Assembly (NCBI RefSeq): GCF_003704095.1
Contig: NW_020844981.1
Location: forward strand, 62,001-126,000
DNA: 64,000 bases
DNA from: Pocillopora damicornis
Lineage: Eukaryota
Direction: 5' to 3'
Part shown: in pieces, positions 1,815 through 62,725 of the stretch
Layout of the letters: each line of letters begins with the position of its first letter
Numbering within the stretch: the first letter of the stretch is position 1
The notes under the pieces: generated by a model
What the model was told of the DNA's origin: nothing
The model's input: the letters and a program-made list of their open reading frames with translations, nothing else
Databases searched by the model: none
Program-made: the position numbers and the translations under genes

Positions 1815-9796
<7,982 letters not shown>

Positions 9797-42150: not shown

Positions 42151-44014
42151 GTTGTCTGAATTTGATTACATGGATACTTATGAAAATTTACGCACTGCAG
42201 TACAGTGCGTTCAAAAAACCTGTCGAAAAAAGGGGAGAGACCACTTTAATAGCAATAAGTGGTTACGCTATTAATAGTACCGTTGAAATGATGAATCGTC
42301 CGGACCTGGACTTTTAGGAGTATAAAGTTGTCAAGAAAGACTAATAAAAGTAAAGCTATTTTGTAAACAAATGGCTGGTACCTTGAACATGGATTAGTAC
42401 ATACATATCGCACAAGGATTCTATCTTTTAGCGCGTTCTGATTGGCCAACTCGGAGGTACGGAAAATCCAAGAGTATGTTTACAGTAAACATGGAAGTGC
42501 ATTAACACTTCGACTTTCGCCCCAGTTGCCGATATCTTGCTAGTGTCATGATAATTCTTACCATTTAACTTAACTAGATTTTAAAAGTAAACTGTGGAAG
42601 CAAAGTGTTCTTCCTTACTTTCTTTGAGGAGACAAAGCTAGTTGAAGGCAAATCCCAAAAGCTCATATAAAGACATTTCAGGCCACTTCAATATAGGGTT
42701 GACATCATTATATTAGTTTTTAAGGACAAAAATTCTTTTAAGATTTAAGTTCTTACGTCTCAATGGTAGAAAAAAGCACCGCAAACAATAAAGAGAGAAA
42801 CGGCGTGACCCTCAGGAAAAAACATTCCTTGGCAGAGATCCTTATTTTCTGGACGCTCCTCTATTAGGGGCAAGGAATATTTCCTAAATTTATACAATAT
42901 TGAAGCAATAAGCACATCAAGAAGTTTTGCAACTAGATTTTTAGCTAACTCTGCCAGTTGACTGAAATACCACACACGGTCCCCCTTGCAGATTTTTTTC
43001 GGCCATTGTGAGACACCAAATAAGAGCCAACATGTACGAAAAGGGAACTGATGTTCAAGAAGCCGATACTGATCCTGTTTTGTTATTTAAAAAAATAGGC
43101 AATTCTCTTCCTCATTCACTTAAATTCACAACTGACACTTATGCTGCTGTGTTAGAATTAACTTCGACTAGGTCCCAGTGATTTCGTGTCGCAATCAAAT
43201 ACGTCAAGCGACATGTAAAAACTTGCGCGGTAACACGCATTTAGCGTGCAACACAAAATCATTATTCGTCAAGACCACCGTTCAGCATTGAAACAATCCT
43301 TTCTTTTAGCATGTACTGATTTAAAGAACCGCAACAATATGACGAGATATTTATGGCTTAAATGTTGTGTGGTTTTCTGAAAAGTTGATTTCTTGCAATA
43401 TGTGTTGAGTGAATCCTCCTCCCCAGGCCCTCGAACGATTGGCTTCTGCTCATGAACGCTCCTCTGACAGAAGAGAATTAAAAACTAGCGTTTCCAAATG
43501 TCTCGCTAATATAACAGGATGATCAGCTTTGTAAATTATTTACAAAGCTGATCATTCAGCTCCCCTATTCCAAGCCTTGAATTTGAAATTATTGTCCCAG
43601 CTGCTAATTTGTGTGTTTTTTCAGGCGATGATCTTACAGGGTGAGCTCTAAAATATTTATGTACATGTTATACCCCATGTAATGGATGAATATTCAAAGA
43701 AACAGTGATTGTTGGCTTTTACTTGAGTTATTGTCAAGATTATAAAAAACGTTTATTTTAATGCTTAACTCTAGTGCACTTGAGCTGCGCAGAGCACGAC
43801 ACTGGGTTAAAAACCTGAATTACCGATTTATTTCAATGATTGACTCCCTGTTTGAACGTAATGTACAAGTACACTTGATTCCAAAAGAAAAGATTTCTAC
43901 CTACTTACCGTCATGGGTCAAATGCATTGAAACTTAACCGTCAAGTGTCAAGATAGGAATATTTTAACCGTCAACCGTCAAAGGTATCCTCCTTTTCAGA
44001 CCTTTAAGGAGGAA

Positions 44015-44903
44015 CGGGCCATTGGTTGGCCTGAGAACGAAAATAACTGTGAAAATGACAGTCCCAATTACTTTGTGCCAGAGACAAATGATCGCATTTT
44101 ATTGGCTGTCTGATGTGAGTGACGTAGGACGTATGCAGGGGAAAAACTCAAAGGACGAACAGAGAAAACTGAATTTATTTTTAAAGAAAGACACTGAAGA
44201 CTGCTGATCATGGTAAGTACTGTCTGTTTCAAAACAAGTGATACTATGCTATGTATTCACTACTGTTGTCTTTACTTAAGTAAGACTTTGGAGATTAAAG
44301 CGTCCCATCATGTCCCGATCATATCGCTGATGCGACTTGGTTGAAGGGAATTCTGATATCTGCGATAGAAAATGAAAAGTCAAGAGTTCGTAAAAACAGT
44401 TACAAACAGTGTGTACGAAATCCACGTTTTGAAATCCATTTACAACTACTAGGTTCGATCAATAAATAGCTTTAAACCAGCGCTAGTTAACTGGGTAATT
44501 ATTTTAGTGAGTTATGGAATACAAAATGCCCGCCTCTTCAGGGTCAATCTCTGTAAAACCTTTTTCTTCGACCTAACTTGAGCAGAATTCGATCTGTAAA
44601 GAGGAAGATTGAAAATCGAATATCTTTTACAGGAGCGTAACTGAGACCATTTACATTTCCTATGATTGGAAGGAAGATGAGATGCAAGTCACCCGAATAT
44701 TATGTGCATGTTCGATCTTTGGTACATTTATTTCAGTTTCTAAGTCTTACTTTCATTACTGATGATGGATTTGAACATGAAAAGATAAAACAATTTCCTT
44801 TATTTTACAGGAAACGACAAGCCTCAGTGTTTATTGCTTTTGAGCGGTTGGATTTTCATCAAGCGATCAATCACAGTACAATTGAAGCTTTTTCCTGTAA
44901 AAG
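44015..44903 (+). promoter_or_regulatory. Probable promoter and 5' leader exons of TPR-CHAT gene A (paralogous region about 52950-53821 in unit B)
   Basis: ATTGG boxes at 44021 and 44101; strong donor ATG|GTAAGT at 44212; exon TTTTACAG|44811-44903|GTAAGC; acceptor CTTACAG ending at 47861, 14 nt before the ATG; all splice sites are kept in unit B. Confidence 0.55.
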
Positions 44904-45934
44904 GTAAGCTATCTATGTGCGATGAATGAATGTTTTCATTTTCTAGTGGGTGTAACCTGCGTGATGAAGACAAAGACTTAATATGAAACACAGGTGGGCT
45001 TTTACGGGCGTCGTTGTGTAAACCGACGACCTTCCTACCAAAGTGTTACCATTAAAGGTATTCATTTCGATAAGAATGAAACATCGAGACAATCAGGGGT
45101 CACTACAGAGGTTTCAGGTTAACAATCTTTTAGGACCAATTAACAATTGATATCTCTCTCACGGATTTGGAATTTAATATTACTGCACTGAGCGATCATT
45201 CGAATAATGATAGAAATTCTTCACAGCTAAAGCTAATTTTTATATTCGAAAAAGTAGCAAACAAATTTGATGCCAAATGCTTACATCCTTTTTAGCTCTC
45301 AAAATTCTCAAATTTCTCTGAAGAAAGTTTAATGTTTATTGATGTTTATATCTATATTTGATTAATCAGAAACTGGAAAAGTCTCACTTTCCGAGGCTAA
45401 GCCAAAAAGGTGCGTTACGTTGTTAGTTGAGAGCACGAATTTGAAACAAAAGAAGCAATCAACTTCTTTTTATAGATGCAAATTACGTTGTTAGTTTCTC
45501 TCACTATTGTGGTCTGTTATCTATTACCTTTAAACCAGTCACAAAACTTATTTTTCAACGGAAGGGAGGGGAGGGGGCTGCACCTTTGTTTCATTGGAAT
45601 ATACCAGGANNNNNNNNNNTAAACCCACGTGGATATCCCTCGCCGTTATCGCCAATTTGTGACGACATGAAGGAAAATGAAAAGCCCTGAGGAAGGTACC
45701 TAACGAGAACAATGAAAATAGGACCTTATGAAATTTGAATGGATCAAATTCAAGAAAGATCTGAAATTAAAGTTTAATGTTCGGGTCGTTAAACTAATGT
45801 GGCAAAAACTAGACTAGATCTTAATCAACTGCTGAGAAGATGGCGACGGATGAAATACTCAGTTTAAAATCACGTAACGTCACAAAACCCAATATCCAAA
45901 CTTACATGGAATACAGCTGTATTTACATTCCGTG

Positions 45935-46262
45935 TAATTACTAAACGACTATTGGATGAGGTTTTTGTGATATTCGGAAGAATCAAGGTTGAGGTAGGGG
46001 TTGTCAGCCGAGCCAAAGGCTAATGCTGATAACCCTAAAAGAGATCTTGATTATTCTCGATATCACAACAACCGAATCTAATTATTGTTTTATTATACAT
46101 TGAACGAAAAAAAAAATGGTTGCGTCATGGTGACTTTAAGTGTCCTTGACATGATAATTGTGTAATCTGCAGCTAGATGACGTCTCAGGCGCTGAATTCA
46201 TGCAATCACTGTGCGTTTTCGGTCAATCAGAAAAGAGGTAGTGAGTTGAATGCATAATAATA
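45935..46262. repeat. Interspersed repeat, also at about 54830-55170 (duplicated with the unit); distant relative near 34860-35170
   Basis: Shared GCTGATAACCCT...CCGAATCTAATAATTG...CAATCAGAAAA...GTATAATAAT blocks. Confidence 0.5.
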
Positions 46263-47875
46263 TTCATTAAATAACGATCGAATGAACGGTCGAATGATTC
46301 AGTGTCAGTGGGTAAGTGAGTAGCGTTCCCTTTCTGAGTCCAAACAGGACGAATGAAGTTTGCCGTGATTCATTGGCCGGGGAAAAAGTCGAGGCTCCTA
46401 CCTTGAGCTGTAGGGATTTTAGTTCGAAATTATGGCGATTACTCTTGCATGCTGAACCAGTGCTGGTGTCTAAAGATTTGATCGAGCTGTTTATTTTTCT
46501 GTATTCTACAATATCTCAAATTCTTGGCTTCAGGCAATCAATATATTTACTTTTCGTTTCCTAGATTGCGTGACAAAGACAACCACTGATACCGAAATGC
46601 AAATATCGCAAATTCAAACCGGAAATCTTTCCTGACTGCAAATAACGCCTTTGTATAAATAATTGATTACATAAAAACTGAAATTCTGTGTGCCTCTTTT
46701 AGTGAAGTTCCAAAATCAGCCAATCCACTACAAACTTAATTTCAAAGCAATGATAACAAACAAATGACCGGAGAATTCAGAGAAAAAAAAACAATACCAA
46801 GAAATTATTTGCAATCGTACAGGGGTTGATTTTAGTGTTAAGTACGAATGATTGTCACATTGGCTATAAAGGTCGCACCGCAATGGCTTGGCACTTTCTA
46901 AAAGACTATTTACATTTCAAATATGAAAGCAAGTCATGCTTTGTTGATCTGGAGTGAATTACACAGTAACAAAAGTTGGGTTACCAAGTTTCAGCGAGCG
47001 CGAATTTTACTTGTCCATGAAAAACTGAAACGATATGGATGGACAGCTTGTGGTATCAGAATGAAAATTGGTGACAGACGGGAAGAAGCAGTGGATTGGA
47101 GAAACTAAGGAACAGTATGCACATCGGGTGGTTACTACACTTGCATCAGTAACAAGAGATTCTGTAGAAATCGCAGTGCATTTGTCATTTTGATTAACTG
47201 CATTAGCATGCTTTGGGAGTTGATTGTAATGATATATCCTAAGCACTTCAAATTGTTCATAGAATGTCTTGTTTGAAATATGTGTCTTACACAAATCCTA
47301 TTGCTAATGTAGATTGAAAGCCTCGCACCAGAAACCTCATTCGAGACGTCTTGTAAGATTTCTGTGTTTTGACGGTCTCTGGAGGGTCTCACTTGGAAAC
47401 AGTTGGAAAACTTTGTAGCCCCGGATACTTTAGGTACTTTCGTCTTAATATTCATAACATGACTTTTCTTTGGAATTGGTTTCGATGAATGAAACAGTTA
47501 ATTGGAAAAATACAGGAAAACATGCTTGTTATGAATCATCTGGAATTTCCTTTCCAAAAATTATTGAGTAAACCGAGTAAGTTGAGTGATAAGAACACTT
47601 ATCGATTGAGTGTTGTGTCTGAAATCAAAACCAAAGTAATCTTAATAGCCAATCAGAAGAAAGAAAAATACCCTTTAAGAGCCAATGAGAACTCAAAGAG
47701 TATTCATTTAAAAGCATTTCCTTCAGAGCCTCTCGTCATTTACGTGTAAGGAAGAACTACTGACGAGCTAAGCCGTCAGCCGCGTTTTGCACACTGTAAA
47801 TTTTTTTTTAATTACTCGCTTCTTATGTATAATGTTTCCTTCACTTCTTTCAAACTTACAGCAAAGAAGACTGCA

Positions 47876-50800
47876 ATGGACAAAATAGAAGGGGTTTTAG
47901 ACACAGTACAAGTGGTCTTTATAGGTATGACGATCGCCAATTTCCTTCTAAACACTGGTCGCCTTTCACCAGCCATTGAGTTGTGTAAGGAATGTCTGAG
48001 TTTACTAGACAGTCGGGCGCTTGATGAGATTGGAGATGCAGTGGATTACCGAATCCTTGGAACTCTGCACCAATCGGTTGGTGATTATAACAAGGCTCAA
48101 GAATATTACAAGAAAGCACTTGCTATCAAAATGGAAATTGGTGACAGAGGGGGAGAAGCAGTGGATCACGGAAATCTAGGAACAATGTTCCAATCGCTTG
48201 GTAATTATAAAAAGGCACAAGAACATTACATGAAAGCACTTTCCATCAGAACACAAATTGGTGACAGAAAGGGAGAAGCAGTGGTTTACAGAAACTTAGG
48301 AACCTTGTTCCAATCGCTTGGTAGTTATAACAAGGCACAAGAATATTACAAGAAGGCACTTGCTATCACAATAGAAATTGGTGACAAAGGGGGAGAAGCA
48401 GCGGTGTACGGAAATCTAGGAACAATGTTCCAATCGCTTGGTAATTATAAAAAGGCACAAGAATATCACGAGAAAGCACTTTCCATCAGAACACAAATTG
48501 GTGACAGAAAGGGAGAAGCAGTGGTTTATAGAAACCTAGGAACCATGTTCCAATTGCTTGGAGATTATAACAAGGCACAAGAATATTACAAGAAGGCACT
48601 TGCTATCACAATAGAAATTGGTGACAAAGGGGGAGAAGCAGCGGATTATGGAAATATAGGAACAATGTTCCAATTCCTTGGTAATTATAAAAAGGCACAA
48701 GAATATCACGAGAAAGCACTTTCCATCAGAGCACAAATTGGTGACAGAAAGGGAGAAGCAGTGGTTTATAGAAACCTAGGAACCTTGTTCCAATCGCTTC
48801 ATAATTATAACAAGGCACAAGAATATTACAAGAAAGCACTTGAAATCACACTGGAAATTGATGACAAAGGGGGAGAAGCAATGGCTTACGGAGACCTAGG
48901 AACAGTGTTCCAATCGCTTGGTAATTATAACCAGGCGCAAGGATATCACGAGAAAGCACTTGCTATCAGACTGGAAATTGGTGACAGAAAAGGAGAAGCA
49001 GCGCAATACGGAAACCTAGGAACAGTGTTCCAATCGCTTGGTAATTATAACAAGGCGCAAGAATATCACGAGAAAGCACTTGCCATCAGACTGGAAATTG
49101 GTGACAGAAAAGGAGAAGCAGCGGATTACAGAAACATAGGAACAGTGTTCCAATCGCTTGGTAATTATACCAAGGCACAAGAATATTATAAGAAAGCACT
49201 TGTCATCAGAATGGAAATTGGTGACAGAAAGGGAGAAGCAGTGGATTACGGAAATCTTGGAACGGTGTTCCAATCGCTTGGTAATTATTACAAGGCACAA
49301 GAATATTACAAGAAAGCACTTTCTATCAGACTGGAAATTGGTCACAGAAAAGGAGAAGCAGCGGATTACGGAAATCTAGGAACAGTGTTCCAATCGCTTG
49401 GTAATTATAAAAAGGCACAAGAATATTACATGAAAGCACTTGCTATCGGACTGGAAATTGGTGACAGAAAAGGAGAAGCAGCGGATTACGGAAACCTAGG
49501 AACCGTGTTTCAGTTGCTCGGTAATTATGCCCAGGCCCAGGAATATTACAAGAAAGCACTTGCTATCACAATGGAAATTGGTGACAAAGGGGGAGAAGCA
49601 GCGGATTACGGAAAGTTGGGAACAATGTTCCAATCGCTTGGTAATTATAAAAAGGCACAAGAACATCACGAGAAAGCACTTTCCATCAGAAAACAAATAG
49701 GTGACAGAGCAGGAGAAGCAGAGGATTACAAGAACCTTGGAATAGTGTTTCAATCGCGTGGTAATTATGACAAGGCACAAGAATATTACAAGAAAGCACT
49801 TGCTATTAGATCGGAAATTGGTGACAGAGAAGGAGAAGCAACGGATTACGGAAATTTAGGAAGACTGTTTGATTTACTCGGTGAACATGACAAGGCTCAA
49901 GAACATCTAGAGAAAGCACTACGAATTAGTAAGGAAATTTGCAACAGAAATCTAGAAGCAAGTTGTTATGCAAACCTTGGAGCTTTTTTTCTGTCACTCG
50001 GAAAATACCCTAGAGCAGATAAATATCTAGTACAAGCATTAGCAATAGCAAAGGAAATTGGCGATAAACATGGAGAGGCAGCAGTTTACAGTAATTTTGG
50101 GAGAATTTCTCACCATCTTCATGATTATGAAAAAGCTCAAGAATATCACAAGAAAGCCCTTGCAATCTATGAGGAAATTGGCGGCAGAGATGGAGAAGTA
50201 GTCGAATACGCAAGTTTGGGGGTATGTTTCCAATCACTTGGCATATATAACGTGGCCGAAAAATACATCAAGAGGGCCTTATTAATAAGCAAGAATATTG
50301 GACACAACTTTAATGAATTTAGCTGCCTTTGTCAACTAGCACAGTTGAAGCTATCACAATTTAATCTCAAAGAAGCCATATCATATCTTTTTCAGTGCAT
50401 TGGAAAATTCGATACGTTGCGAGGTTTCCTTAAAGATAACGATCAGTTTAAGACTTCTCTTTTAGAGAAGCACGGCAATTTTCCATACAAGTTGCTCAGT
50501 AAATTGCTTTCTTCTACCGGAAAGACAAGAGATGCTCTTTATGTTGAGGAGCTGAGACGGGCAAGAGGCCTCGCCGACTTCATGGCAGCCAAATACTCTG
50601 TTGAAGAGTTGATCTCAGGCAACCCACAGTCATGGCATGGCATTCAAACCATCATTACAAAAGAAACAAACTGTACATGTCTTTACATTTCAGTTGAAAA
50701 AGAACACGCACGGTACTGGATTCTCAAAGCATCAGGAGCCATTCACTTCTCACGAAAGAAAGTGAGTCTGGAGAAACGTGTGGTGACCAGATTAGTTCCT

Positions 50801-51175
50801 GATTTGGATCAGTATTTCACAGAAAGCTTTCGCAGCCTTGGCATTCTACTTCAACAGAATTGCGAAGATCGTTCATTAGATGACACCGAATCAATGCTAC
50901 CTCACTATGACCAAGACAATCGCGGGCTCATGCGTGATTTTGATCCGAAAGATTTTAAAACGAATCTTCAGTCGTGTTACGAGATAATCATCGCTCCCGT
51001 GGCCAGTTTACTGAAGGAGCCCGAGATTTTAATTGTCCCTGAATCCTGTATGTACCAAGTCCCATTTGCAGCCATCAGTGATGATGGAGGAACATATTTA
51101 GTGGATACCTTCAGGATCCGTGTCGTTCCCTCTCTGACGACTCTAAAGCTGATTCGGGACAGTTCCCCCGACTAC
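47876..51175 (+). CDS. TPR-array + CHAT domain protein A (TTC28-like architecture), 3' end lost in an assembly gap
   Basis: No intron in the visible CDS; likely start MDKIEG at 47876 after a splice acceptor; about 20 TPR units of 40 aa; then ALYVEELRRARGLADFM linker and CYEIIIAPVASLL...ILIVPE...YQVPFAAI...YLVDTFRIRVVPSL, the typical N-terminal part of a CHAT domain. ORF-track residues after the gap are not trustworthy. Confidence 0.9.
48050..49970 (+). repeat. Coding minisatellite: about 16 near-identical 120-bp TPR units, followed by about 4 diverged units
   Basis: GGAAA(C/T)CTAGGAACAGTGTTCCAATCGCTTGGTAATTAT...GAAATTGGTGACAGA recurs at exact 120-nt spacing. Confidence 0.95.
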
Positions 51176-51275
51176 NNNNNNNNNNNNNNNNNNNNNNNNN
51201 NNNNNNNNNNNNNNNNNNNNNNNNNNNNNNNNNNNNNNNNNNNNNNNNNNNNNNNNNNNNNNNNNNNNNNNNNNN
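51176..51275. other. Assembly gap (100 N, true size unknown); further gaps at 45610-45619, 59926-60025 and 61345-61444
   Basis: N runs. Confidence 0.99.
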
Positions 51276-54200
51276 TTAAAAGGCTTCTTCATCTTAACCA
51301 CTTCTATGTTTAGTCAACTCTTAGGGTATGATCCTATCACATTTGGAATGAAAGTCTACCCTGAGCGAGTCTAAGATTTTGAAAAGGCTTTATAGATATA
51401 ACCACATATCAAAATAATCATATTTCACGACTTATTTCGGATTTGATGTTACAGTTTAAGATTTAGCGATGTTGGAATATAAGCTACATCCACAAGTTTT
51501 TCGTCCCGGAACACAAAATAGATAAAAACATATTTTGTATTATTATTCTACATTAAAATCACAGGACGAACGTGCATATAATAAAAGGCAGACGGTGCGA
51601 AACAGTAATAAGACTCTCTCTTATCATAACTACGTAAGTACTTCCAATCATCCAAGTAGTTAATTCTTAAAACGCAAGATTCTCGTCCAAATATGAAAAA
51701 TAAAACTTTGATTCAACACTTAAAGGTCAGGACCCCTTCCTGTTCACGCTGAGATGGCCCCATTAAAGTTTTTCTGTCATTCACTTCAATGTCGAACTAA
51801 CTTTTTTAGTTCTGTTTCTTCCAAATTGCTTTATTTTACTGCAAAGGAAGTCCACATGCTTCTAACTTTATTCATCTTGTTTTTTTTTCCAAGTAAGAGA
51901 ACCCAACCTCACCGACCTTTAAGGTTAGTATTACGTTTCCTCGCCATTTTTTTCATATTCATTGTTGTCAATTATTGTCAATTAATTTCTCCATTTAAAG
52001 CAAAATGAAATAAATAATATCAATCAATATAAGACTAAACTGTTGGCAATTGTAAGAAAAAGAATTGATTACGAATAAACTGAACAATAAAAAGACTCGG
52101 CAAAAGAAAAGATAAAAGACTATTTCGAATTTCAAAACGCCTTACTTACTAAAGGAAGAAACTTGCGCGGCAACACGCATTTAGCGTGCAACACAAAATC
52201 ATTGTTCATCAAGACCACCGGCCATCATTGAAATTATCCTTTCTTTTAACATGTAATTATTTAGAGGATCGCATCAATATGACGAGAGATTCAAAGCTTA
52301 TATGTAGTGTAGTTTTCCGAAATGTTGATTTCTTGCAATTTGTGTTGGATGAATCCTCCTCCCCAGGCCTTCGAACGATTGGCTCCTGCTCATGGACGTC
52401 CTCTCTTATCGTAGAGAATTATCCGGCCATTAAAATAGGATGGTCAGCTATGTAAATTAACGCACAGTTCATTTACAAAGCTGATCATTCAGCTCCCCTG
52501 ATCTCATGCCTTGCATTTGAAATTAGCGTCCCAGCTGCTAATTAGTGTGTATTTTCAGGCGATGATCTTACAGGGTGAGCTCTACAATATTTATTTACAT
52601 GTTATACCCCATGTAATGGATGAATATTCAAAGAAACAGTGATTGTTGGCTTTTACTTGAGTTATTGTCAAGTTTATAACAAACGTTTATTTTCATACTT
52701 AACTCTAGTGCACTTGAGCTGCGCAGAGCACGACACTGGGTTAAAAACCTGAATTACCGATTTATTTTAATGATTCACTCCCTGTTTGAGCGTGATGTAC
52801 AAGTACACTTGATTCTAATGGAAACGATATCTACCTAATGGCCGTCAAGCGTCAAATGCCATAAAATGTAACCGTCAAGTGTCAAGATCGGAACGTTTTA
52901 ACCGTCAACCGTCAAAGGTATCCTCCTTTTGAGACCTTTGAGGAAGAAAGGGCCACTGGTTGGCCTGAGAACGAAAATGACTGTGAAGATGGCAGTTCCG
53001 ATGACTTTGTGCCAGAAGCCAATGATCGCATTTCATTGGCTGTCTGATGCGAGTGACGAAGGACGTATGCAGGGAAAAACTCACAGGACTAAAAGAGGAA
53101 ACTAAATTTATTTTTAAAGAAAGACACTGAAGACTTCTGATCATGGTAAGTGCTGTCTGTCTTAAAACAACTGATACCATGCTATGTATGCACTACTGTT
53201 GCCTTTACATAAGTAAGACTTTGGAGTTTAAAGCGTCCGATCATGTCGTTGTGACTTGGCAGAAGGAAATTCTGATATCTGCGATAGAAAATGAAAAGTC
53301 AAGAGTTCGCAACGAACAGTTACAAACTGTGCGTACGGTTTGATGTTTTGAAATCCATTCTACCGGGCTCGATCGATAAATAGCTTTAAACCAGCTCTAG
53401 TAATTTGGGTAATTATTTTAGTGAGTTACCCTTTTATGGAATATAAAAAGCTGGCCTCTTCATAGTCAATCGCTGTATAACTTTGGACTATTGACCAACT
53501 TGAGTAGAATTCGATCTGTAAAGATGAAAAATGGAATACGAATGTCTATTACAGGAGCGTTACTAATTCCTTTTTTTTCCCTACCATTGAAAGAAAGACG
53601 AGATGCGGGTCGCCCGAATATTATGTGTTCGATCTTAAGTACATTCATTTCAGTTTTCTACGTCTTTCTTTCATTACTGATGATGGATTTGAACATGAAA
53701 AGATAAAACAATTCACTTTATTTTACAGGAAACGACAAGCCTCATTGTTCATTCCTTTTGAGCAGTTGAATTTTCATCAAGCGATCAACCACAGCACAAT
53801 TGAAGCTTTTTCCTGTAAAAGGTAAGCTATCTGTGTGCGATGAGTGAATGTTTTCATTTTCTAGTAGTGGGCTTTTACGGGCGTTGTCTAAACCGACGAC
53901 ATTTCTACCTAAGTGTTACCATTAAAGTATTTATTTAGATGAGAATGAAACATCGAGACAAACAGGTGTCACTACTGAGGTTTCAGGTAGACAATCTTTA
54001 AGTAACAATTAACAATTGATATGTCTCTCACGGATTTGGAATTTGAGATTACTGCACTAAGCGATCGTTCGAATGATGATAAAAATTCTTCACAGCTAAG
54101 GCTAATTTTTATACTCGAAAATTTAGCGAACAAATTTGAAGAAATGCTTGCAGCCTTTTCCGCTCTCAAAATTCTCGAATTCCTTCAAAGAAAGTTTAAG

Positions 54201-56838
54201 GTTTATTCATTGATGTTAGGATGATTTGATTATTCAGAAACTGGAAAAGTTTCACTTTCCAAGGCTAAACCAAAAATGTGCATGACGTTGTTTGTTGAGA
54301 GCACGAATTTGAAGTAAAAGAAGCAATAAACCTCGTTTTACAGATGCAGATTACGTTTTAGTTTTTCTTACTATTGTGGTCTGTTATCTATGTACCTTTA
54401 AACCAGTCACAAAACTTATTTTTTAACGGAAGGGAGGGGAGGGGGCTGCACCTGTGTTTCATTGGAATATACTAGGATGTGTTGGGGGGGGAGGGGAGTT
54501 GTAAAGGTACTCAAGGCCCACGTGGATGCCCCCCAGCCAATTTATCGCCAATTTGTGACATAATATAGGAAAATGAAAGGGCCCGTGTAAGGTATCTGAC
54601 GAGAACAATGAAAATAGGAACTGATGAAATCTAAATGGATCAAATTCAAGAAAGATCTGAAATTGATATTTGATGTTCGGGTCGTTAAACTAATGGTGAC
54701 AAAAACTAGATTAGATCTCAATTAAGTACTGAGAGGATGACGACGGATGAAATACTCTGTTTAAAATCACGTAACGTCACCAAACCCAACATCCAAACTC
54801 ACATGGATTACACCTATATTTTCACTCAATGAAATTACTGAACGATCATTTGATGAGGTTTTTATAATATTCAGAAGAATCAAGTTTGAGGTAGGAGTTA
54901 TCAGCCGAAGCCGAAGGCTAATGCTGATAACCCTTGAAGAGACCTTGATTATTCTGGATATCACAACAACCGAATCTAATTATTGTTTTATTATACATTG
55001 AACGAAAAGAAAAAATTGTCGCTTCGTGGTGGCCTTGAGTGTCCATGACATGATTATTGTATAATCTGCGGCTAAAAGACGTCCTAGGAGCTGATTTCGA
55101 AAATTCACGCGATCACTGAGCGCTTTCGGTCAATGAGAAAAGAGATAGTGAGTTGAATGTATAATAATATTCATTAAATGACAATCGAATTCTTTGTCCA
55201 CTAAACAGTCGAATAATTCAGTGCCAGTGGGCAAGTGAGTAGCGCTCCCTTTCCAAGTCCAAACAGGACGGATGAAGTTTGCCGTAATTCATTGGCCAGG
55301 GAAAAAGTCGCGGCTCCAACATTGAGAATTTTAGTTCGAAATTATGGCGAATAACTCTTTCGTACTGAACCAGTGACTGTGTTTAAATATTTCATCGAGC
55401 TGTTTATTTTTCTGTATTTTACAATATCTCAAATTCTTGGCTTCAAGCAATCAATATATTTTCTTTTTAGTTTCATAGATTGCGTGACAAAGAGAACCAC
55501 TGATACTGTAGCTGTTTCCCTAGGCCGACTAATTATAGCTTTGGAAATGTTTCCGAAATGCAAATGATCGCAAATTCAAACCGGAAATCTTTCCTGACTG
55601 CAAATGACGCCTTTACATATATAGACATGTGATTACATAAAAACCGAAATTCTGTGTGCCTCTTTTAGTGAAGTTCCAAAATCAGCCAATCCACTACAAA
55701 CTTTATTCTAAGACAATGATAACAAACAAATGACCAGAGAAATCACAGAAAGAAAAAACCAATAGTAAGAAATTATTTTAAGTCGAACAGGGGTTGATTT
55801 TTAGTGTTAAGTACGAATGAATGTCACATTGGCTTTAAAGGTCGCACCGTGATGGTTTGGCACTTTCTTAGAGATTATTTTCATTTCAAATTTGAAAGCG
55901 AGTCATGCTTTGTTGATCTGGAGTGAATTACACAGTAACAAAAGTTGGATTAGCATGTTTCAGCGAGCGCGAATTTTACGTGTCCATGATTAAAAACTGA
56001 AACGATAAGTATGGACAGCTTCTGGTATCAGAATGAAAATTGGTGACAGATGGGAAGAAGTAGTGGAGTAGAGAAACCTAGGAACAGTATTCACACAGCT
56101 TGGTTACTATACTGGCATCAGCAATAGGAGATTCTGAAGAAATCTTGCATTTGTCAGCTGATTAACTAAAGCAGTGTGCATTGGGAGTTGACTGTAGTGA
56201 CATATCTCAAGCACTTCAAAATTCTTCATAGAATGTCTTGTTTGAAATAAGTGTCTTACACAAATCCTATTGCTTACGTAGATTGAAAGCCTCGCACCAG
56301 AAATCTCATTCGTGACGTCTTGTAAGATTCCTGTTCCTTTTCCACGGTGTCTGGAGGGTCTCACTTGGAAACAGTTGGAATACTTTTAATCCACGGATAC
56401 TTTAGGTACTTTCCTTTTAATATCCATAACATGATTTTTCTTTGCAACTGGTTGTGATGAATGAAACAGTTAATTGGAAAATATAGGAAAACATGTTTGT
56501 TATGAATTATCCGGAATTTTACTTTCCAAAATTAATAAGAAACTAGGTAAGTTAAGTAATAAGAGCACTTTTCAATTGAGTGTTAATTGTGTGTGAAATC
56601 AAAACCAAAGTAATCTTAACAGCCAATCAGAATAAAGAGAATTACCCTTTAAAAGCCAATGAGAACTCAAAGAGTATTCACTTAAAAGCATTTCCTTCAG
56701 AGCCTCTCATCATTTACGTATAAGAAGAACTACCGACGAGCTAAGCCGTTAGCAGCGTTTTGCGCGCTGCAATTTTTTTCCCTTCTTATGTATAATGTTT
56801 CCTTCACTTCTTTCAAACTTACAGCAAAGAAGCCAACA

Positions 56839-59800
56839 ATGGACAACATAGAAGGGGTTTTAAACGCAGTGCAAGTGGTCTTGGTAGGTACGACGATCGC
56901 CAATTTCCTTCTAAACACTGGTCGTCTTTCACCAGCCATAGAGTTGTGTAAGGAATGTTTGAGTTTACTAAACAGTCAGCCGCTTGATAAGGATGGACCA
57001 ATTACCCACTCAATTCTCGTCCAACAGGGAAGGTTAAATTTATTACTAGCAACTACACTTTACACTCAATCGAAGTTTGTGGAGGCCAGAAAATTTTATG
57101 AGAGAGCAATAAAAATCATGAAAACGAATGACGACGAACGAGGAAAAGCAATTTGTTACGGAGGCTTAGCAAAATTACTTTATTCCTTTGGAGAATATGA
57201 CAAATGTAAAAAATATCTGGAGAAGGCCTGCGCGATTAGAAAGCAAATTGGTGACAGAGTCGGAGAAGCAGTGTATTACAGAGAACTAGGAGGACTGTCC
57301 ATATTGCGTGGTAACTATGACAAGGCACAAGAATATATCAAGAAAGCACTTGCCATCAGAACACAAATTGGTGACAGAAAGGGAGAAGGAATGGAGCAAG
57401 GATTCCTGGGAACAGTGTTCCAAATGCTCGGTAATTATGACCAGGCGCGAAAATATCTCGAAAAAGCACTTGCCATTAGACTGGAAATTGGCGACAGAGA
57501 AGGAGAAGCAGCCGATTACGAAAACCTTGGAACAGTGTTCCGATCGCTTGGTAACTATGACAAGGCACAAGAATATTACAAGAAAGCACTTGCTATCACA
57601 CTGGAAACTGGTGACATAAAGGGAGAAGCGAAGATTTACGGAAACCTAGGAACAGTGCTCCGGTTGCTTGGTGATTATGACCAGGCGCAAGAATATTACA
57701 AGAAAGCACTTGCTATCAGACAGGAAATTGGTGACAGAGTAGGACAAGCAGCGGATTACAACAACCTAGGAGCAGTGTTCCAATTTCATGGTAATTATGA
57801 TCAGGCACAAGAATATTACAAGAAAGCACTTGCCATAAGTCTGGAAACTGGTCTCCGACAAGGAGAAGCAGCGGTATACGGAAACCTAGGAACAGTGTTC
57901 CAATCGCTTGGTAATTATGACAAGGCGCAAGAATATTACAAGAAAGCACTGGCCATCAGAATGGAAATTGGTGACAGAAAGGGAGAAGCAGCGAATTACG
58001 GGTGCCTAGGAACAGTATTTCAATCGCTTGGTAATTATGCCCAGGCGCAAGAATATCACGAGAAAGCAATGGCCATCAGAATGGAAATTGGTGACAGAGC
58101 AGGAGAAGCAGTGGATTACGGAAACCTAGGAACAGTGTTTCAATCGCTTGGTAAATATAACATGGCACAAGAATATTACAAGAAAGCACTGGCCATCACA
58201 ATGGAAATTAGTGACAGAAGAGGAGAAGCAGCAGATTATGGATGCCTTGGATCAGTGTTCCAATCGCTTGGTAACTATAAGCAGGCACAGGAATATTACG
58301 AGAAAGCACTGGCCATCAGAATGGAAATTGGTGACAGAGCAGGAGAAGCAGTGGATTATGGAAATCTAGGAACAGTGTTTCGATCGCTTGGTAATTATGG
58401 CCAGGCGCAAGAATATTACGAGAAAGCACTAGCTATCACACTGGAAATTGGTGACAGAGAAGGAGAAGCAGCGGATTACGGAAACCTAGGAACAGTGTTC
58501 CAATCACTTGGTTATTATAACCAGGCGCAAGAATATCACGAGAAAGCACTGGCCATCAGAAGGGAAATTGGTGACAGAAAAGGAGAAGCAACGGATTACG
58601 AAAACTTAGGGGGACTGTTTGCAATACTCGGTGAACATGACAAGGCTCAAGAATATCTCGAGAAAGCTCTACGTATTAGAAAGGAACTCTGCAACAGAAA
58701 TGGAGAAGCAAGTTGTTATGCAAACCTTGGAGCTTTGTTTCTGTCACTCGGAAAATACCCTAAGGCAGATAAATATCTAGAGCACTCATTGGCAATAATG
58801 AAGGAAATTGGCGATAAAAATGGAGAAGCAGATGTTTATGGTCATTTTGGGATAATTTCTCATCATCTTCATGATTATGAAAAAGCTCAAGAATATCACA
58901 AGAAAGCCCTTGCAATCTATGAGGAAATTGGCGACAGAAATGGAGAAGCAGTCGAGTACACAAATTTAGGGAAATGTTTCCAATCGCTTGGCAGATATAA
59001 TGTGGCCGAAAAATACATCAACAGGGCCCTATTAATAAGCAAGAATATTGAACACAACTTGAACGAATATGGGTGCCTTCGTCACCTTACGGTGTTGAAA
59101 CTATCACAATTTAATCTCAAGGAAGCCATGTCGTATCTTTTTCAGTGTATTGGGAAATTCGACACGTTGCGAGGTTTCCTTAAAGATAACGATCAGTTTA
59201 AGACTTCTCTTTTAGAGAAGTACGGCAATTTTCCTTATAAGTTGCTCAGCAACTTGCTTTCTTCTACCGGGAAGCCAAGAGATGCTCTTTATGTTGAAGA
59301 GCTGAGACGGGCAAGAGGCCTCGCCGACTTCATGGCAGCCAAGTACTCTGTAGAAGAGCTGATCTCAGGCAATCCACAGTCATGGCATGGCATTCACAAT
59401 ATCATCACAAAAGAAACAGACTGTACATGTCTTTACATTTCAATTGGAAAAGAACATGCACGGTACTGGATTCTCAAAGCATCAGGAGCCATTCATTTCT
59501 CACGAAAGAAAGTGAGTCTGGAGCAACGCGTGGTGACCAAATTAGTTCCTAATTTGGATGAGTTTTTCACAGAAAGCTTTCGCAGCCTTGGCATTTTACC
59601 CCAACGGAATTGTGAAGATCGATCATTAGATGACACCGAATCGATGCCACCTCACTATGCCGATGACAATCACGGGCTCCTGCGTGATTATGATCCAAAA
59701 GATTTCAAAACGAATCTTCGGTCGTGTTACGAGATAATCATCGCTCCCGTGGCCAGTTTACTGAAGGAGCCCGAGATTTTAATTGTCCCTGAATCCTGTA

Positions 59801-60099
59801 TGTACCAAGTCCCATTTGCAGCCATCAGTGATGAAGGAGGAACATATTTAGTAGATACTTTCAGGATCCGCGTCGTTCCCTCTCTGACGACTCTAAAGCT
59901 GATTCGGGACAGTTCCCCCGACTACNNNNNNNNNNNNNNNNNNNNNNNNNNNNNNNNNNNNNNNNNNNNNNNNNNNNNNNNNNNNNNNNNNNNNNNNNNN
60001 NNNNNNNNNNNNNNNNNNNNNNNNNTCATGCTTATTGGCGATAACGTGACATTTGATTTTGAAAACTGGCCAGTGTCTAAAACATCCAAACAGCCATGA
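56839..60099 (+). CDS. TPR-array + CHAT domain protein B (TTC28-like architecture), catalytic core lost in an assembly gap
   Basis: Paralogue of gene A; start MDNIEG at 56839; about 18 TPR units; CHAT N-terminal part before the gap; after the gap MLIGDNVTFDF...stop matches the usual CHAT C-terminal strand (WA.F.LIG). Confidence 0.9.
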   Translation: MDNIEGVLNAVQVVLVGTTIANFLLNTGRLSPAIELCKECLSLLNSQPLDKDGPITHSILVQQGRLNLLLATTLYTQSKFVEARKFYERAIKIMKTNDDERGKAICYGGLAKLLYSFGEYDKCKKYLEKACAIRKQIGDRVGEAVYYRELGGLSILRGNYDKAQEYIKKALAIRTQIGDRKGEGMEQGFLGTVFQMLGNYDQARKYLEKALAIRLEIGDREGEAADYENLGTVFRSLGNYDKAQEYYKKALAITLETGDIKGEAKIYGNLGTVLRLLGDYDQAQEYYKKALAIRQEIGDRVGQAADYNNLGAVFQFHGNYDQAQEYYKKALAISLETGLRQGEAAVYGNLGTVFQSLGNYDKAQEYYKKALAIRMEIGDRKGEAANYGCLGTVFQSLGNYAQAQEYHEKAMAIRMEIGDRAGEAVDYGNLGTVFQSLGKYNMAQEYYKKALAITMEISDRRGEAADYGCLGSVFQSLGNYKQAQEYYEKALAIRMEIGDRAGEAVDYGNLGTVFRSLGNYGQAQEYYEKALAITLEIGDREGEAADYGNLGTVFQSLGYYNQAQEYHEKALAIRREIGDRKGEATDYENLGGLFAILGEHDKAQEYLEKALRIRKELCNRNGEASCYANLGALFLSLGKYPKADKYLEHSLAIMKEIGDKNGEADVYGHFGIISHHLHDYEKAQEYHKKALAIYEEIGDRNGEAVEYTNLGKCFQSLGRYNVAEKYINRALLISKNIEHNLNEYGCLRHLTVLKLSQFNLKEAMSYLFQCIGKFDTLRGFLKDNDQFKTSLLEKYGNFPYKLLSNLLSSTGKPRDALYVEELRRARGLADFMAAKYSVEELISGNPQSWHGIHNIITKETDCTCLYISIGKEHARYWILKASGAIHFSRKKVSLEQRVVTKLVPNLDEFFTESFRSLGILPQRNCEDRSLDDTESMPPHYADDNHGLLRDYDPKDFKTNLRSCYEIIIAPVASLLKEPEILIVPESCMYQVPFAAISDEGGTYLVDTFRIRVVPSLTTLKLIRDSSPDYXXXXXXXXXXXXXXXXXXXXXXXXXXXXXXXXXXMLIGDNVTFDFENWPVSKTSKQP
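57230..58730 (+). repeat. Coding minisatellite: about 12 similar 120-bp TPR units
   Basis: Same 120-nt periodicity as in gene A. Confidence 0.93.
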
Positions 60100-62725
60100 G
60101 AGAAGCGAATCCTTTGAAATGGACCAAGTAAAATTTGCAACCATCAATTGCCTTCCTGTGGAAAGAGGACGCCGTCTATGAAGGACAAGATTGATTAACG
60201 AAAAACTCTTCTGTGAACGCTTTGTGTAACAATCTGGAACAAGACAGTTCATAATTCAGTGTTTATTAGCCGGCAGTTAAGCTGTGAACAAAGTTCATAT
60301 GTCAAAACAAACAAAATCTGAGTACGTATTTTCCAAAAGCGATAACCAAACAAATATAAAGCAGTTTTTTTTCGCAAATAATTAGTTATTTAAGCGAAGC
60401 AAATTTTTTCCAATTTTTTTTTCCACTTTCTTGTATTTTCTTATAAAAGGATATGGTAATTAAATGTTTCGACAGCTCTTTTTGCAAAGAAATAAGTTTT
60501 AAAATCGCAATAAGGTCGATATAGCGCTCTCCTTGTCTCTTGTATCTATACGGAATATAATGCTTAAAATTTTTCCTTGAAATTGATTGCCTGAGTTATC
60601 AGTTTTTCACGGGCTAAAATTTTCAAATATTAAATGAACATTCGTTTCGACACAAAACATTCTCAAGACTATTCTAGTTTTAGGAGCAGTTTACAGTCTG
60701 TAATATTCTATTGCAGATATATGTGTATAGGTCTGTTTTGTAAACTTCTATGTTGAGTGACTTCCATTGGTGACCCTCTAGTTTAGTTTGTAAAGGTTAT
60801 TATTTTTGGTAAAATCGCTTTCAAGAATCTATGTTTAAGAGACAGGCCAGCCATTAATAAAGAGACATCTGTAACTTTAGCTATAAAAATTTTTTTTTCA
60901 GGACTCAATAAGTTTATTAGGGGCAGTTGTCATTGTGCGATGTTCAAGTTTACTAACGTTTAATTAAAAGAAATTATTTTACTTAAGGTCTTCTCATATC
61001 CTGCTGAAGATTTGTAGGACAGACTTATTTTCCTTTATTGACTCATTTAGGACTTAGATTCTTTTAGCCAGTCCCTCTCCGTTAGTTTGAACGTGACACA
61101 TGATGGCTGGTAGACTGGGACTGACGGAACTCCGCGTTCAATTTTGAAAAAAGTGTAACATTTTCTTCTAAATTTGTCTTTACTTTTAATTCACATTTTT
61201 TTCCATTTTATTACATAAATACTATCTCAATTATAAACTGACACGTTTTCAATTCCGTCTAGTGTAACTTGTAAATGGACTTTCCTTATTGTTAAAAGGC
61301 TTCTTCATCTTAACCACTTCTATGTTTAGTCAACTCTTAGGGTANNNNNNNNNNNNNNNNNNNNNNNNNNNNNNNNNNNNNNNNNNNNNNNNNNNNNNNN
61401 NNNNNNNNNNNNNNNNNNNNNNNNNNNNNNNNNNNNNNNNNNNNTTAAAAGGCTTCTTCATCTTAACCACTTCTATGTTTAGTCAACTCTTAGGGTATCA
61501 TCTTATCACATTGGAATGAAAGTCTACCCTGAGCGAGTCTAAAATTTTAAAAAGGCTTTAAAGATTTAACCACATGTCAAAATAACCATATTTCACGACT
61601 TATTTCGGAGTTGATGATAAAATACATTTTGTATTATTATTCTACGTTAAAATCACAGGACGAACGTGCATATAATAAAAGGCAGACGTGCCAAACAGTA
61701 ATAACACTTTCTCTTATCATAACTACGTAAGTACTTCCAATCATCCAAGTATTTAATTCTTATAAACGCAAGATTCTTATCCAAATGTGAAAAATTAAAA
61801 TTGACGCGACACTCAAGGGTCAGGGCACCTTCCTGTTCACTGTGAGATGGCCCCACACAGACATGATCCCATTAACTTTTTTGTCATTTACTTCAATTTC
61901 GAAGTAATTCTTCTTAATTCTTTTTTTGTTTCAACTAAATTGTTTTATTTTACTGCAAAGCAAGTCTATTTGCTTCTAACTTTATTCATCATCTTTTTCC
62001 ATAGTTTTTTTTCCAAGCGAGAGAACCCAACTTCACCAGCCTTTAAAGTTACTAAAAGGTTTCCTCGCCATTTTTCCATATTCATTGTTGACAATTATTG
62101 TCTATTAATTTCTCCATTTAAAGCAAAATGAAATAAATAATAACATAAAAAGTCGTTTAACTAATTCAACAAACTCAAAATATAAGACTAAACTGTTGGC
62201 AATTGTATGTAAGAAAATTGATTACGAATAAACATATCAATAGAAAAACTCGGTGAAAGCTAAGATAAAAGACTATATTCGAATTTTCAAAACGCCTTAC
62301 TTACTAAATGAAGAAACATGTAAAGGAGGTTTTACTTCCATGAGAAAAACTGGTCATTTTCATTTCGACTGCTTCGCGCTAACCCTCCTAGGTAACTCGG
62401 GCAACTCTTGAGCAACTCGGAAATTGCGTGCAATATAATAGCGCTGATCACTTAACTCCGTTTGACCAGCATTCATACATCTTGAACTTTTAAGATTTTT
62501 CCTTCGACTTCCGTATTTCTGTCTGTCAAAATGAGTTGAAATGCTGAATGTTAGTGTCCAGTTTTCTCAGTTTTCTTCATGCTGGTTGATTTTCTCGTTA
62601 CCAACACTACAAGGGAGGAAGGGAGGAATATTGCAATAACTGCAAGAGGGGCTACAGGACAGGATAAAATGATATGTGGCTTTTTCTAAACTGGCGCTGA
62701 TGCTTGGTCAGAATTGCGATATATT

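What the first reader, a model, noticed from the sequence alone, without database searches (positions are those of the whole stretch)
47876..60099. Tandem TPR-CHAT genes built like variable-sensor / constant-protease receptors
Seen: two paralogues, each with one long coding exon, joining a 120-bp-unit TPR array to a CHAT domain. The arrays differ in unit number (about 16 vs 12 core units) and order, and units within a gene are highly similar even at silent sites. Established: CHAT belongs to the caspase/separase clan; in bacteria TPR-CHAT proteases act in defence (gasdermin-associated proteases, Csx29 of Craspase); fungal NLRs diversify their specificity through near-identical TPR/WD40/ankyrin repeats. 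Inference: these could be a rapidly diversifying, ligand-gated caspase-like immune or allorecognition receptor family in an early-branching animal, rather than the generic TTC28-like proteins they are normally annotated as.
Basis: partly seen in the sequence, partly recalled or inferred. Interest (0 to 1): 0.85.

Follow-up and report, generated by a model that had tools for sequence, protein, structure and literature searches.

The report
Tandem coral TPR-CHAT protease genes
Two neighbouring coral genes each join a long array of 40-residue TPR repeats to a caspase-like CHAT protease; they are ordinary members of a TPR-CHAT ("TTC28-like") family of over 100 copies whose expansion in corals is already published, and an immune-receptor role is plausible but untested.

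Summary
A 9-10 kb segment is duplicated in tandem (43219-52158 and 52159-62317, 85-88% nt identity). Each copy carries one long open exon. Gene 1 (47876-51175) has 19 units of 120 bp; gene 2 (56839-59925 plus 60026-60099) has 17. The last four units are 1:1 between the genes; the core units are reshuffled, with a recent 240-bp amplification in gene 1.

Only the first ~70 of 289 CHAT profile positions lie in the window. The catalytic core falls in 100-N gaps that start at the same base in both genes. That shared break is an assembly-graph junction, not biology.

At family level the protease looks active:
- The genome has at least 138 CHAT matches.
- All 30 best full-length paralogues keep His-Gly and Ser-Cys-Cys.
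- A model of an 89%-identical paralogue matches DdvA, separase and Csx29.
- Contigs from poly-A RNA libraries cover gene 1.

The coral TPR-CHAT expansion is published, including for a 234-Mb Pocillopora damicornis assembly that fits this genome (PMC6208414, PMC9145168, PMC12314368). The scan also flagged this family on two other pieces of this genome.

The immune or allorecognition reading stays a hypothesis. There is no NTPase domain and no gasdermin neighbour. Near-identical public versions are no more diverged in the TPR array than in the linker.

The parts
43219..52158 (.). Tandem duplication unit 1 (includes gene 1 and gap 1)
   Evidence: Self-BLAST: 43219-48025 aligns collinearly with 52159-56988 at 85-88% nt, and 51276-52162 with 61445-62317.
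52159..62317 (.). Tandem duplication unit 2 (includes gene 2, gaps 2 and 3)
   Evidence: It is about 1.2 kb longer than unit 1 because 60026-61344 has no assembled counterpart in unit 1.
47876..51175 (+). Gene 1 coding exon up to the gap (1100 codons from the probable start). The 3' end is not assembled here.
   Evidence: ORF. Start inferred from P. verrucosa models beginning MDNIEG. A polypyrimidine tract plus AG at 47838-47861 suggests a 5'-UTR intron. Contigs from RNA libraries of 4 studies lie on 50016-51174 at 95-100% identity without joints.
48032..50311 (+). Gene 1 TPR array: 19 units of 120 bp (a01-a15 core, a16-a19 divergent)
   Evidence: Pfam TPR_12 615.8 bits in 15 stretches.
50966..51166 (+). 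Gene 1 start of the CHAT domain (profile positions 4-73 of 289)
   Evidence: Pfam PF12770, 30.2 bits against a cut-off of 24.
51176..51275 (.). Assembly gap 1. It hides the CHAT core, the 3' end and about 1.3 kb of flank of gene 1. Not filled.
   Evidence: The right flank starts with the same 53 nt as the flanks of gap 3.
56839..59925 (+). Gene 2 coding exon up to the gap (1029 codons from the probable start)
   Evidence: ORF. Start by homology.
57022..59061 (+). Gene 2 TPR array: 17 units of 120 bp (b01-b02 cap, b03-b13 core, b14-b17 matching a16-a19)
   Evidence: Pfam TPR_12 518.1 bits.
59716..59916 (+). Gene 2 start of the CHAT domain (profile positions 4-73)
   Evidence: Pfam PF12770, 30.7 bits.
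59926..60025 (.). Assembly gap 2. It hides the CHAT catalytic core of gene 2 (about 205 codons in complete paralogues). Not filled.
60026..60099 (+). Gene 2 last 23 codons and TGA stop
   Evidence: The reading ..MLIGDNVTFDFENWPVSKTSKQP-stop matches the C-terminal tail of the complete paralogue on C1433 and of the P. verrucosa proteins.
61345..61444 (.). Assembly gap 3, probably spurious: the same 53 nt stand on both sides
   Evidence: 61292-61344 equals 61445-61497.

Best explanation
These are two tandemly duplicated, expressed, single-coding-exon members of the lineage-expanded coral TPR-CHAT ('TTC28-like') gene family, in a pocilloporid coral that is most likely Pocillopora damicornis.

Each protein has a short helical N-terminus and a solenoid of 17-19 units of 40 residues (TPR_12 type). 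A helical linker and a beta-rich subdomain follow, and a C-terminal CHAT cysteine protease of the caspase/separase clan ends the protein.

Shown:
- the architecture;
- the tandem duplication;
- array remodelling by gain, loss and reshuffling of units;
- purifying selection on the non-core part;
- an invariant His-Gly / Ser-Cys-Cys dyad in the 30 best full-length paralogues.

Inferred mechanism, by analogy with Csx29, separase and the fungal TPR-CHAT gasdermin protease: the TPR solenoid binds a protein partner or ligand. That binding allosterically controls the protease, which then cleaves a still unknown substrate in stress, cell-death or immune signalling. Many paralogues with different arrays would give different partner specificities.

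The identical break point of both genes is an artefact of short-read assembly.
For: Identity:
- Pfam TPR_12 at 616 and 518 bits and CHAT at about 30 bits, above cut-off.
- At least 138 CHAT matches and 136 linker matches in the genome.
- Named best hits are 'tetratricopeptide repeat protein 28-like' from Pocillopora verrucosa, P. meandrina and Stylophora.
- The 234-Mb assembly size fits the published P. damicornis assembly.

Protease:
- The paralogue on C1433 (89% aa identity) has a full CHAT domain of 190 bits with IHFAAHGD and VVLSCCYSARG.
- 30 of 30 paralogues keep these residues.
- His-Gly and the second Cys align with those of the CHAT protein 8rot.
- The AlphaFold2 model (pLDDT 83.8) hits DdvA, separase and Csx29 at E 1e-11 to 1e-9.

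Constraint and expression:
- pN/pS is 0.35 over 448 codons outside the core array, and both frames are open for more than 1000 codons.
- Contigs from RNA libraries of 4 studies (poly-A, oligo-dT, random and cDNA) lie on gene 1, one of 482 nt with no difference.

Array dynamics.

Assembly artefact:
- The last 54 nt before gaps 1 and 2 are identical in the two genes.
- 53-nt identical contig ends flank gap 3 and follow gap 1.
- The same break recurs on C1433.

Published context.
Against: - The catalytic core of both window genes is unread, so their own activity is not shown.
- The 3' end of gene 1 is missing from the assembly at this place.
- No substrate, ligand or partner is known for any animal TPR-CHAT protein. 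The human relative TTC28 is linked to cytokinesis, not proteolysis (as cited in PMC12314368).
- RNA evidence is from assembled contigs at low depth, and no silent stretch was laid as a control for DNA carry-over.
Confidence: 0.7

Rival explanations
1. One reading: a rapidly diversifying, ligand-gated caspase-like immune or allorecognition receptor family, in which the TPR array senses non-self and the CHAT domain executes.
For: - The family is large, tandemly duplicated and lineage-specific (PMC12314368).
- Core units have recent common ancestry and replacements sit at fixed exposed positions, with pN at positions 4, 5, 7, 20, 34 and 40 running 1.4-2.2 times the mean pS.
- Public near-identical versions of gene 1 have 1 or 12 fewer units.
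- The catalytic dyad is invariant.
- Fungal and bacterial TPR-CHAT proteases act in cell death and defence.
- 56 TTC28-like genes of P. damicornis changed expression after treatment with a bacterium under heat stress (PMC10668361).
Against: - No challenge, binding or cleavage data exist.
- There is no NTPase switch domain.
- The single gasdermin locus is unlinked.
- TPR units of near-identical public versions are as conserved (98.0-98.5% aa) as the linker (98.3-99.0%), unlike hyperpolymorphic allorecognition loci.
- Each window gene has its own stable near-identical counterparts in other samples.
- The per-site pN/pS values are not a formal test. The differences in unit number may be short-read assembly collapse.
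Confidence: 0.3
2. A housekeeping TTC28-type scaffold (mitosis, cytokinesis or cilia) in which the CHAT domain is not used as a regulated protease.
For: - Same domain order as human TTC28/TPRBK (PMC12314368).
- The fold search also hits ciliary central-apparatus proteins (ranks 31-40).
Against: - More than 100 copies with genus-specific expansion do not fit a housekeeping role.
- A separate canonical TTC28 orthologue is conserved in acroporid corals (PMC9145168).
- The catalytic dyad is invariant in 30 of 30 paralogues.
Confidence: 0.1
3. One or both copies are decaying duplicates (pseudogenes), or the pair is an assembly artefact such as haplotypes placed in tandem.
For: - The 3' end of gene 1 is missing.
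- Several family members elsewhere carry stop codons.
- The assembly is fragmented around these genes.
Against: - Both frames are open for more than 1000 codons, with pN/pS 0.35.
- 12-15% nucleotide divergence is far above haplotype level.
- Each gene has its own 97-99% identical counterparts in other public assemblies.
- RNA-library contigs cover gene 1, and two of them run on past the gap edge.
Confidence: 0.07

Closest known systems
Coral TPR-CHAT domain-containing proteins / TTC28-like expansion (Acropora, Montipora, Pocillopora; PMC12314368, PMC9145168, PMC6208414)
   Same: N-terminal TPR array plus one C-terminal CHAT domain. Hundreds of copies, tandem duplication and very variable TPR length. 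The best named hits are Pocillopora and Stylophora TTC28-like proteins at 57-88% identity in the linker.
   Different: Nothing essential; this is a member. Added here: unit-level anatomy of one pair, the invariant dyad in 30 paralogues, and the assembly explanation for the shared break point.
Human TTC28 (TPRBK)
   Same: TPR array followed by a CHAT domain. Coral papers name it as the putative homologue.
   Different: It is single-copy with a reported role in mitosis and cytokinesis. Orthology to the window genes was not tested here, and acroporid corals keep a separate canonical TTC28.
Csx29 (bacterial TPR-CHAT of type III-E CRISPR Craspase)
   Same: TPR region plus CHAT protease. The fold of the linker plus CHAT of the close paralogue matches at E about 1e-10 and TM-score about 0.5. 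It gives the principle of an allosterically switched protease.
   Different: Only 10-12% sequence identity. Csx29 is activated through Cas7-11 and target RNA, has a short TPR part and cleaves Csx30. None of these partners exists in the coral.
Fungal TPR-bearing CHAT protease that activates a gasdermin (Podospora anserina; PMC8851545, PMC12881547)
   Same: A eukaryotic repeat-plus-CHAT protease proposed as a sensor in regulated cell death.
   Different: It is encoded next to its gasdermin substrate. Here the only gasdermin hit is on another contig.
Separase and Myxococcus DdvA (CHAT anti-sigma factor, PDB 8rot)
   Same: Top structural matches at E about 2e-11. The His-Gly and Cys motifs align with 8rot by sequence at E 5e-5. 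Both have a helical repeat region upstream of a two-lobed protease.
   Different: Different N-terminal regions and regulators (securin for separase; a membrane anchor and sigma factor for DdvA). Both are single-copy.
Fungal NLRs with highly internally conserved TPR/WD40/ANK repeats (my own knowledge, not tested here)
   Same: Near-identical tandem repeat units, reshuffled by unequal recombination, with variation at fixed positions.
   Different: NLRs have a central NACHT/NB-ARC NTPase, which is absent here.

Membership tests
CHAT domain (Pfam PF12770, clan CD peptidases) | HMM match above the gathering score | tested here: met
   30.2 and 30.7 bits against a cut-off of 24, but only profile positions 4-73 of 289. 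The 89%-identical paralogue scores 190 bits over positions 4-289.
CHAT domain (Pfam PF12770, clan CD peptidases) | Catalytic His (His-Gly) and Cys in the window genes themselves | not testable with these tools
   The core lies in the N gaps at 51176-51275 and 59926-60025, which may not be filled. In 30 of 30 full-length paralogues of the same genome both residues are present.
CHAT domain (Pfam PF12770, clan CD peptidases) | Caspase/separase-like fold | tested here: met
   Tested on the close paralogue only: pLDDT 83.8, with Foldseek hits to DdvA, separase, Csx29, SAVED-CHAT, gingipain and MALT1.
Coral TPR-CHAT DCP / TTC28-like family | N-terminal TPR array (PF13424/PF13176) followed by a single C-terminal CHAT domain | tested here: met
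   The gene 2 tail after the gap matches the family's C-terminus.
Coral TPR-CHAT DCP / TTC28-like family | Multi-copy, tandemly duplicated, lineage-specific expansion | tested here: met
   At least 138 CHAT matches. Tandem 9-kb duplication. A cluster of at least 4 close paralogues on C1433. A 38-row Pocillopora clade with one Stylophora protein outside it, on a quick tree.
NLR / STAND receptors | Central NACHT or NB-ARC NTPase domain | tested here: not met
   No NTPase family among the Pfam hits of either protein.
Gasdermin-associated CHAT proteases | Gasdermin gene in the neighbourhood | tested here: not met
   One PF04598 match in the whole genome, on contig C3447, which carries no CHAT match.
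Craspase Csx29 | Sequence-level membership or association with Cas7-11 | tested here: not met
   No Csx29 model was hit in PADLOC; the only CHAT hit was a weak SAVED_CHAT match at 19.5 bits. Sequence identity in the structural alignments is 10-12%. This is a eukaryotic genome.

The most novel reading that the evidence does not exclude
The coral TPR-CHAT family is a true animal counterpart of repeat-based sensor proteases. Arrays of near-identical TPR units would diversify by unit gain, loss and reshuffling, with selection at exposed helix-A and loop positions. They would gate an active separase/Csx29-like protease that triggers cell death or immune signalling on recognising microbial or allogeneic ligands.
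Probability: 0.25. Interest if true: 0.75.

Novelty: already known. Interest (0 to 1): 0.3.

Why it matters
If coral TPR-CHAT proteins are ligand-gated proteases, they would be a large class of innate immune or stress sensors in reef corals that works without an NLR-type NTPase. They would also be a eukaryotic parallel to bacterial Craspase and to the fungal gasdermin proteases.

This locus adds no new principle. The expansion, the variable TPR length and the link to caspases are published, including for a 234-Mb P. damicornis assembly that fits this genome.

Three results here are useful. The family keeps its catalytic dyad without exception in 30 paralogues. Arrays evolve by in-register unit turnover while the C-terminal four units stay fixed. 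The striking identical break point of both genes is an assembly junction.

Tried and rejected
- 'Homogenised protease module' as the cause of the identical break: rejected. The two genes share an identical 54-nt word at the break. Gap 3 has identical 53-nt flanks, and the same word follows gap 1. Between two complete paralogues on C1433, identity is uniform (89-98%) along the linker and CHAT core. A collapsed near-identical 3' segment (60026-61344) shared by the two window units remains possible but untested.
- Gasdermin linkage: none.
- PADLOC defence models: only generic TPR hits and a weak SAVED_CHAT hit.
- Sequence search of solved structures: only 8rot at E 5e-5.
- Per-codon pN/pS on 26 core units: descriptive only. 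Units recombine, and per-site pS ranges from 0 to 0.98, so I do not claim positive selection.
- Unit-number polymorphism. P0012 has the complete N-terminus but exactly 12 units fewer. P0008 lacks unit a09. P0016 has a08-a19 in the same order. All come from assemblies of unknown type, so repeat collapse cannot be excluded.
Only 49870-51175 was laid.
- The reads tool printed up to 30 letters of two contigs that run past 51174. I did not use or repeat them.
- For proteins 97-99% identical to the window genes, my scripts printed and compared only the parts that precede the gap position. The gaps were not filled.
- The careful tree search did not finish, so one search is the quick tree.
Full report
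**What is in the sequence.** The window is G000:C1616:62001-126000 of a 234.35-Mb assembly in 4393 contigs. Self-comparison shows a two-copy tandem duplication. Region 43219-48025 matches 52159-56988 at 85-88% nt, 48485-51175 matches 57235-59925 at 86.6%, and 51276-52162 matches 61445-62317.

Each unit holds one long open frame on the + strand. These are 47825..51175 (1117 codons to the gap) and 56788..59925 (1046 codons). Gene models of Pocillopora verrucosa relatives start MDNIEG, which is M18 of both window frames. The likely start codons are therefore 47876 and 56839. A polypyrimidine tract ending in AG at 47838-47861 suggests that only a 5'-UTR intron precedes the exon; this is inference.

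**Domains.** Pfam gives TPR_12 at 616 and 518 bits in 15 and 13 stretches. It gives CHAT at 30.2 and 30.7 bits (cut-off 24), covering only profile positions 4-73 of 289. No NTPase or death-fold domain is found.

**The repeat arrays.** Tandem Repeats Finder finds period 120 with no indels, 15.3 copies in gene 1 and 11.4 copies in gene 2. In register:
- Gene 1 has 19 units of 40 residues, at residues 70-829 of the ORF.
- Gene 2 has 17 units, at residues 79-758.
- The last four units pair one to one between the genes (88-92% nt) and are only 60-72% like any other unit.
- Gene 2 keeps two divergent N-terminal cap units that gene 1 has lost.
- The 15 and 11 core units are 81-94% alike and match out of order.
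- Units a02-a07 form a gene-1-specific amplification of a two-unit (240 bp) block at 91-94% nt.

Among the 26 core units pS is 0.246 and pN is 0.159. Across the 448 codons outside the core array, the two genes differ by pS 0.179 and pN 0.063.

Replacements concentrate at unit positions 4, 5, 7, 8, 20, 34 and 40. In my alignment to the canonical 34-residue TPR these are positions 2, 3, 5, 6, 18 and 32, plus one in the extra inter-repeat loop residues of the 40-residue unit. Packing positions (G1, Y6, L9, G10, F13, Y19, A22, A29, I32) are fixed. This fits exposed-surface variation but is not a formal test of positive selection.

**The gaps.** Both gaps start after the same codon (...SSPDY). The last 54 nt before them are identical in the two genes. 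Gap 3 (61345-61444) has the same 53 nt on both sides, and the right flank of gap 1 starts with those same 53 nt. Contigs therefore end at words shared by the two units. This is what a short-read graph assembler does; the published Pocillopora damicornis assembly used Illumina shotgun reads with HiRise scaffolding (PMC6208414). On contig C1433 another member of the subfamily is broken within 17 nt of the same edge. The shared break is an artefact.

After gap 2 the sequence 60026-60099 reads the last 23 codons and the stop that end complete paralogues. Gene 2 thus spans its gap. Gene 1's 3' end is not assembled at this place. I did not fill any gap.

**Family and catalytic residues.** The genome has at least 138 CHAT matches, about 50 of them near full length without stops. 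It has 136 matches to the linker plus CHAT start of gene 1. The nearest paralogues (88-89% aa) form a cluster on C1433.

One of these, in L043, is complete at its 3' end. It has a 190-bit CHAT domain with the motifs IHFAAHGD and VVLSCCYSARG. In an alignment of the 30 best genomic paralogues, His, Gly, Ser and both Cys are invariant. By sequence, His-Gly and the second Cys align with those of the CHAT protein 8rot at E 5e-5.

An AlphaFold2 model of the linker plus CHAT of this paralogue was built from 24 sequences (pLDDT 83.8, pTM 0.88). It shows a helical linker, a beta-rich lobe and the protease lobe. It hits DdvA, human and yeast separase and Csx29 at E 1e-11 to 1e-9. SAVED-CHAT, gingipains and MALT1 follow.

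**Expression.** Contigs from RNA libraries of four studies (poly-A, oligo-dT, random and cDNA) lie on 50016-51174 at 95-100% identity, without joints. One 482-nt contig is identical. Two contigs run on beyond 51174, so the transcript continues where the assembly has N. No silent stretch could be laid as a control for DNA carry-over.

**Relatives in other samples.** Named hits are TTC28-like proteins of Pocillopora verrucosa, P. meandrina, Stylophora pistillata and Oculina. This and the assembly size point to Pocillopora damicornis; that is inference.

In a quick tree of the pre-gap 287 residues:
- Gene 1 sits in a 10-row clade (support 99) of 98-100% identical public proteins.
- Gene 2 sits in a 3-row clade (support 100).
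- The C1433 paralogues sit in a third group.
- A single Stylophora protein lies outside the whole 38-row Pocillopora clade.

Both genes are thus stable, distinct loci within a genus-level expansion.

Public versions of gene 1 keep units a08-a19 in order (P0016), lack a09 (P0008), or have a complete N-terminus with exactly 12 fewer units (P0012). This is either real unit-number variation or repeat collapse in short-read assemblies. In these versions the TPR units are 98.0-98.5% identical to the window and the linker is 98.3-99.0% identical. The array is not hypervariable between samples.

**Comparison with what is known.** Cunning et al. 2018 already reported that coral-diversified TPR proteins in P. 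damicornis often carry a CHAT domain, and they proposed apoptotic signalling. Yoshioka et al. 2022 described the TTC28-like expansion in Montipora and a separate canonical TTC28.

The 2025 DNA Research paper counts 276-362 TPR-CHAT genes in several corals. It also reports tandem duplication in non-syntenic regions, copy-number differences between haplotypes and TPR lengths of 31-3832 residues. It discusses them beside the NLR-type immune expansions. A P. damicornis study found 56 TTC28-like genes differentially expressed after treatment with a bacterium under heat stress.

In fungi a TPR-bearing CHAT protease activates a gasdermin, and in bacteria Csx29 is an RNA-triggered TPR-CHAT protease. 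Here the single gasdermin hit is unlinked, and defence-system models give only generic TPR hits and a weak SAVED_CHAT hit.

**Verdict.** The genes are ordinary members of a published coral gene-family expansion. The 'variable sensor, constant protease' design is a fair description and is supported at family level. The immune or allorecognition function remains an untested hypothesis with some evidence against hyperpolymorphism. Other first-stage notes of this scan flagged the same family on two other pieces of this genome.

Noticed in passing
window 61292-61497 and 51276-51328: Gap 3 is flanked by the same 53 nt on both sides, and the right flank of gap 1 begins with the same 53 nt. These look like un-merged overlapping contig ends, so gap 3 is probably of zero or negative length.
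   Followed up: yes
window 60026-61344: This 1.3-kb contig (gene 2 tail plus 3' flank) has no assembled counterpart in duplication unit 1. It may be a collapsed sequence shared by both units, which would imply a much more similar 3' segment than the 85-88% seen elsewhere. Not tested.
   Followed up: partly
window 11174-41400 (+): A large multi-exon VPS13-like gene lies upstream (VPS13_N, 144 bits, on the exon at 11174-12454). It is an ordinary housekeeping neighbour.
   Followed up: partly
window 1815-2561 (-): An ORF whose end matches the C-terminal part of a protein kinase domain (22.5 bits, below cut-off). It is probably the last exon of a kinase gene.
   Followed up: no
window 56615-56689 and 47640-47720: A 33-bp tandem repeat containing CCAAT-box-like words (GCCAATCAG) lies 100-250 bp upstream of both start codons. 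It is a possible shared promoter element.
   Followed up: no
L046 3433-4091 (G000:C1433:166432-167090) versus L043 4595-5253: An orphan 659-nt CHAT-core fragment is 100% identical to the core of the complete paralogue about 30 kb away. It starts 17 nt after the same ...SSPDY edge. This is either a very recent duplication or one contig placed twice.
   Followed up: partly
G000:C1433:155000-198000: A cluster of at least four close TPR-CHAT paralogues (88-89% aa to gene 1). Two have an in-frame TAG inside the CHAT start, and the complete one has an assembly gap inside its TPR array.
   Followed up: partly
window 45610-45619: A fourth, 10-N gap lies in the upstream flank of gene 1.
   Followed up: no
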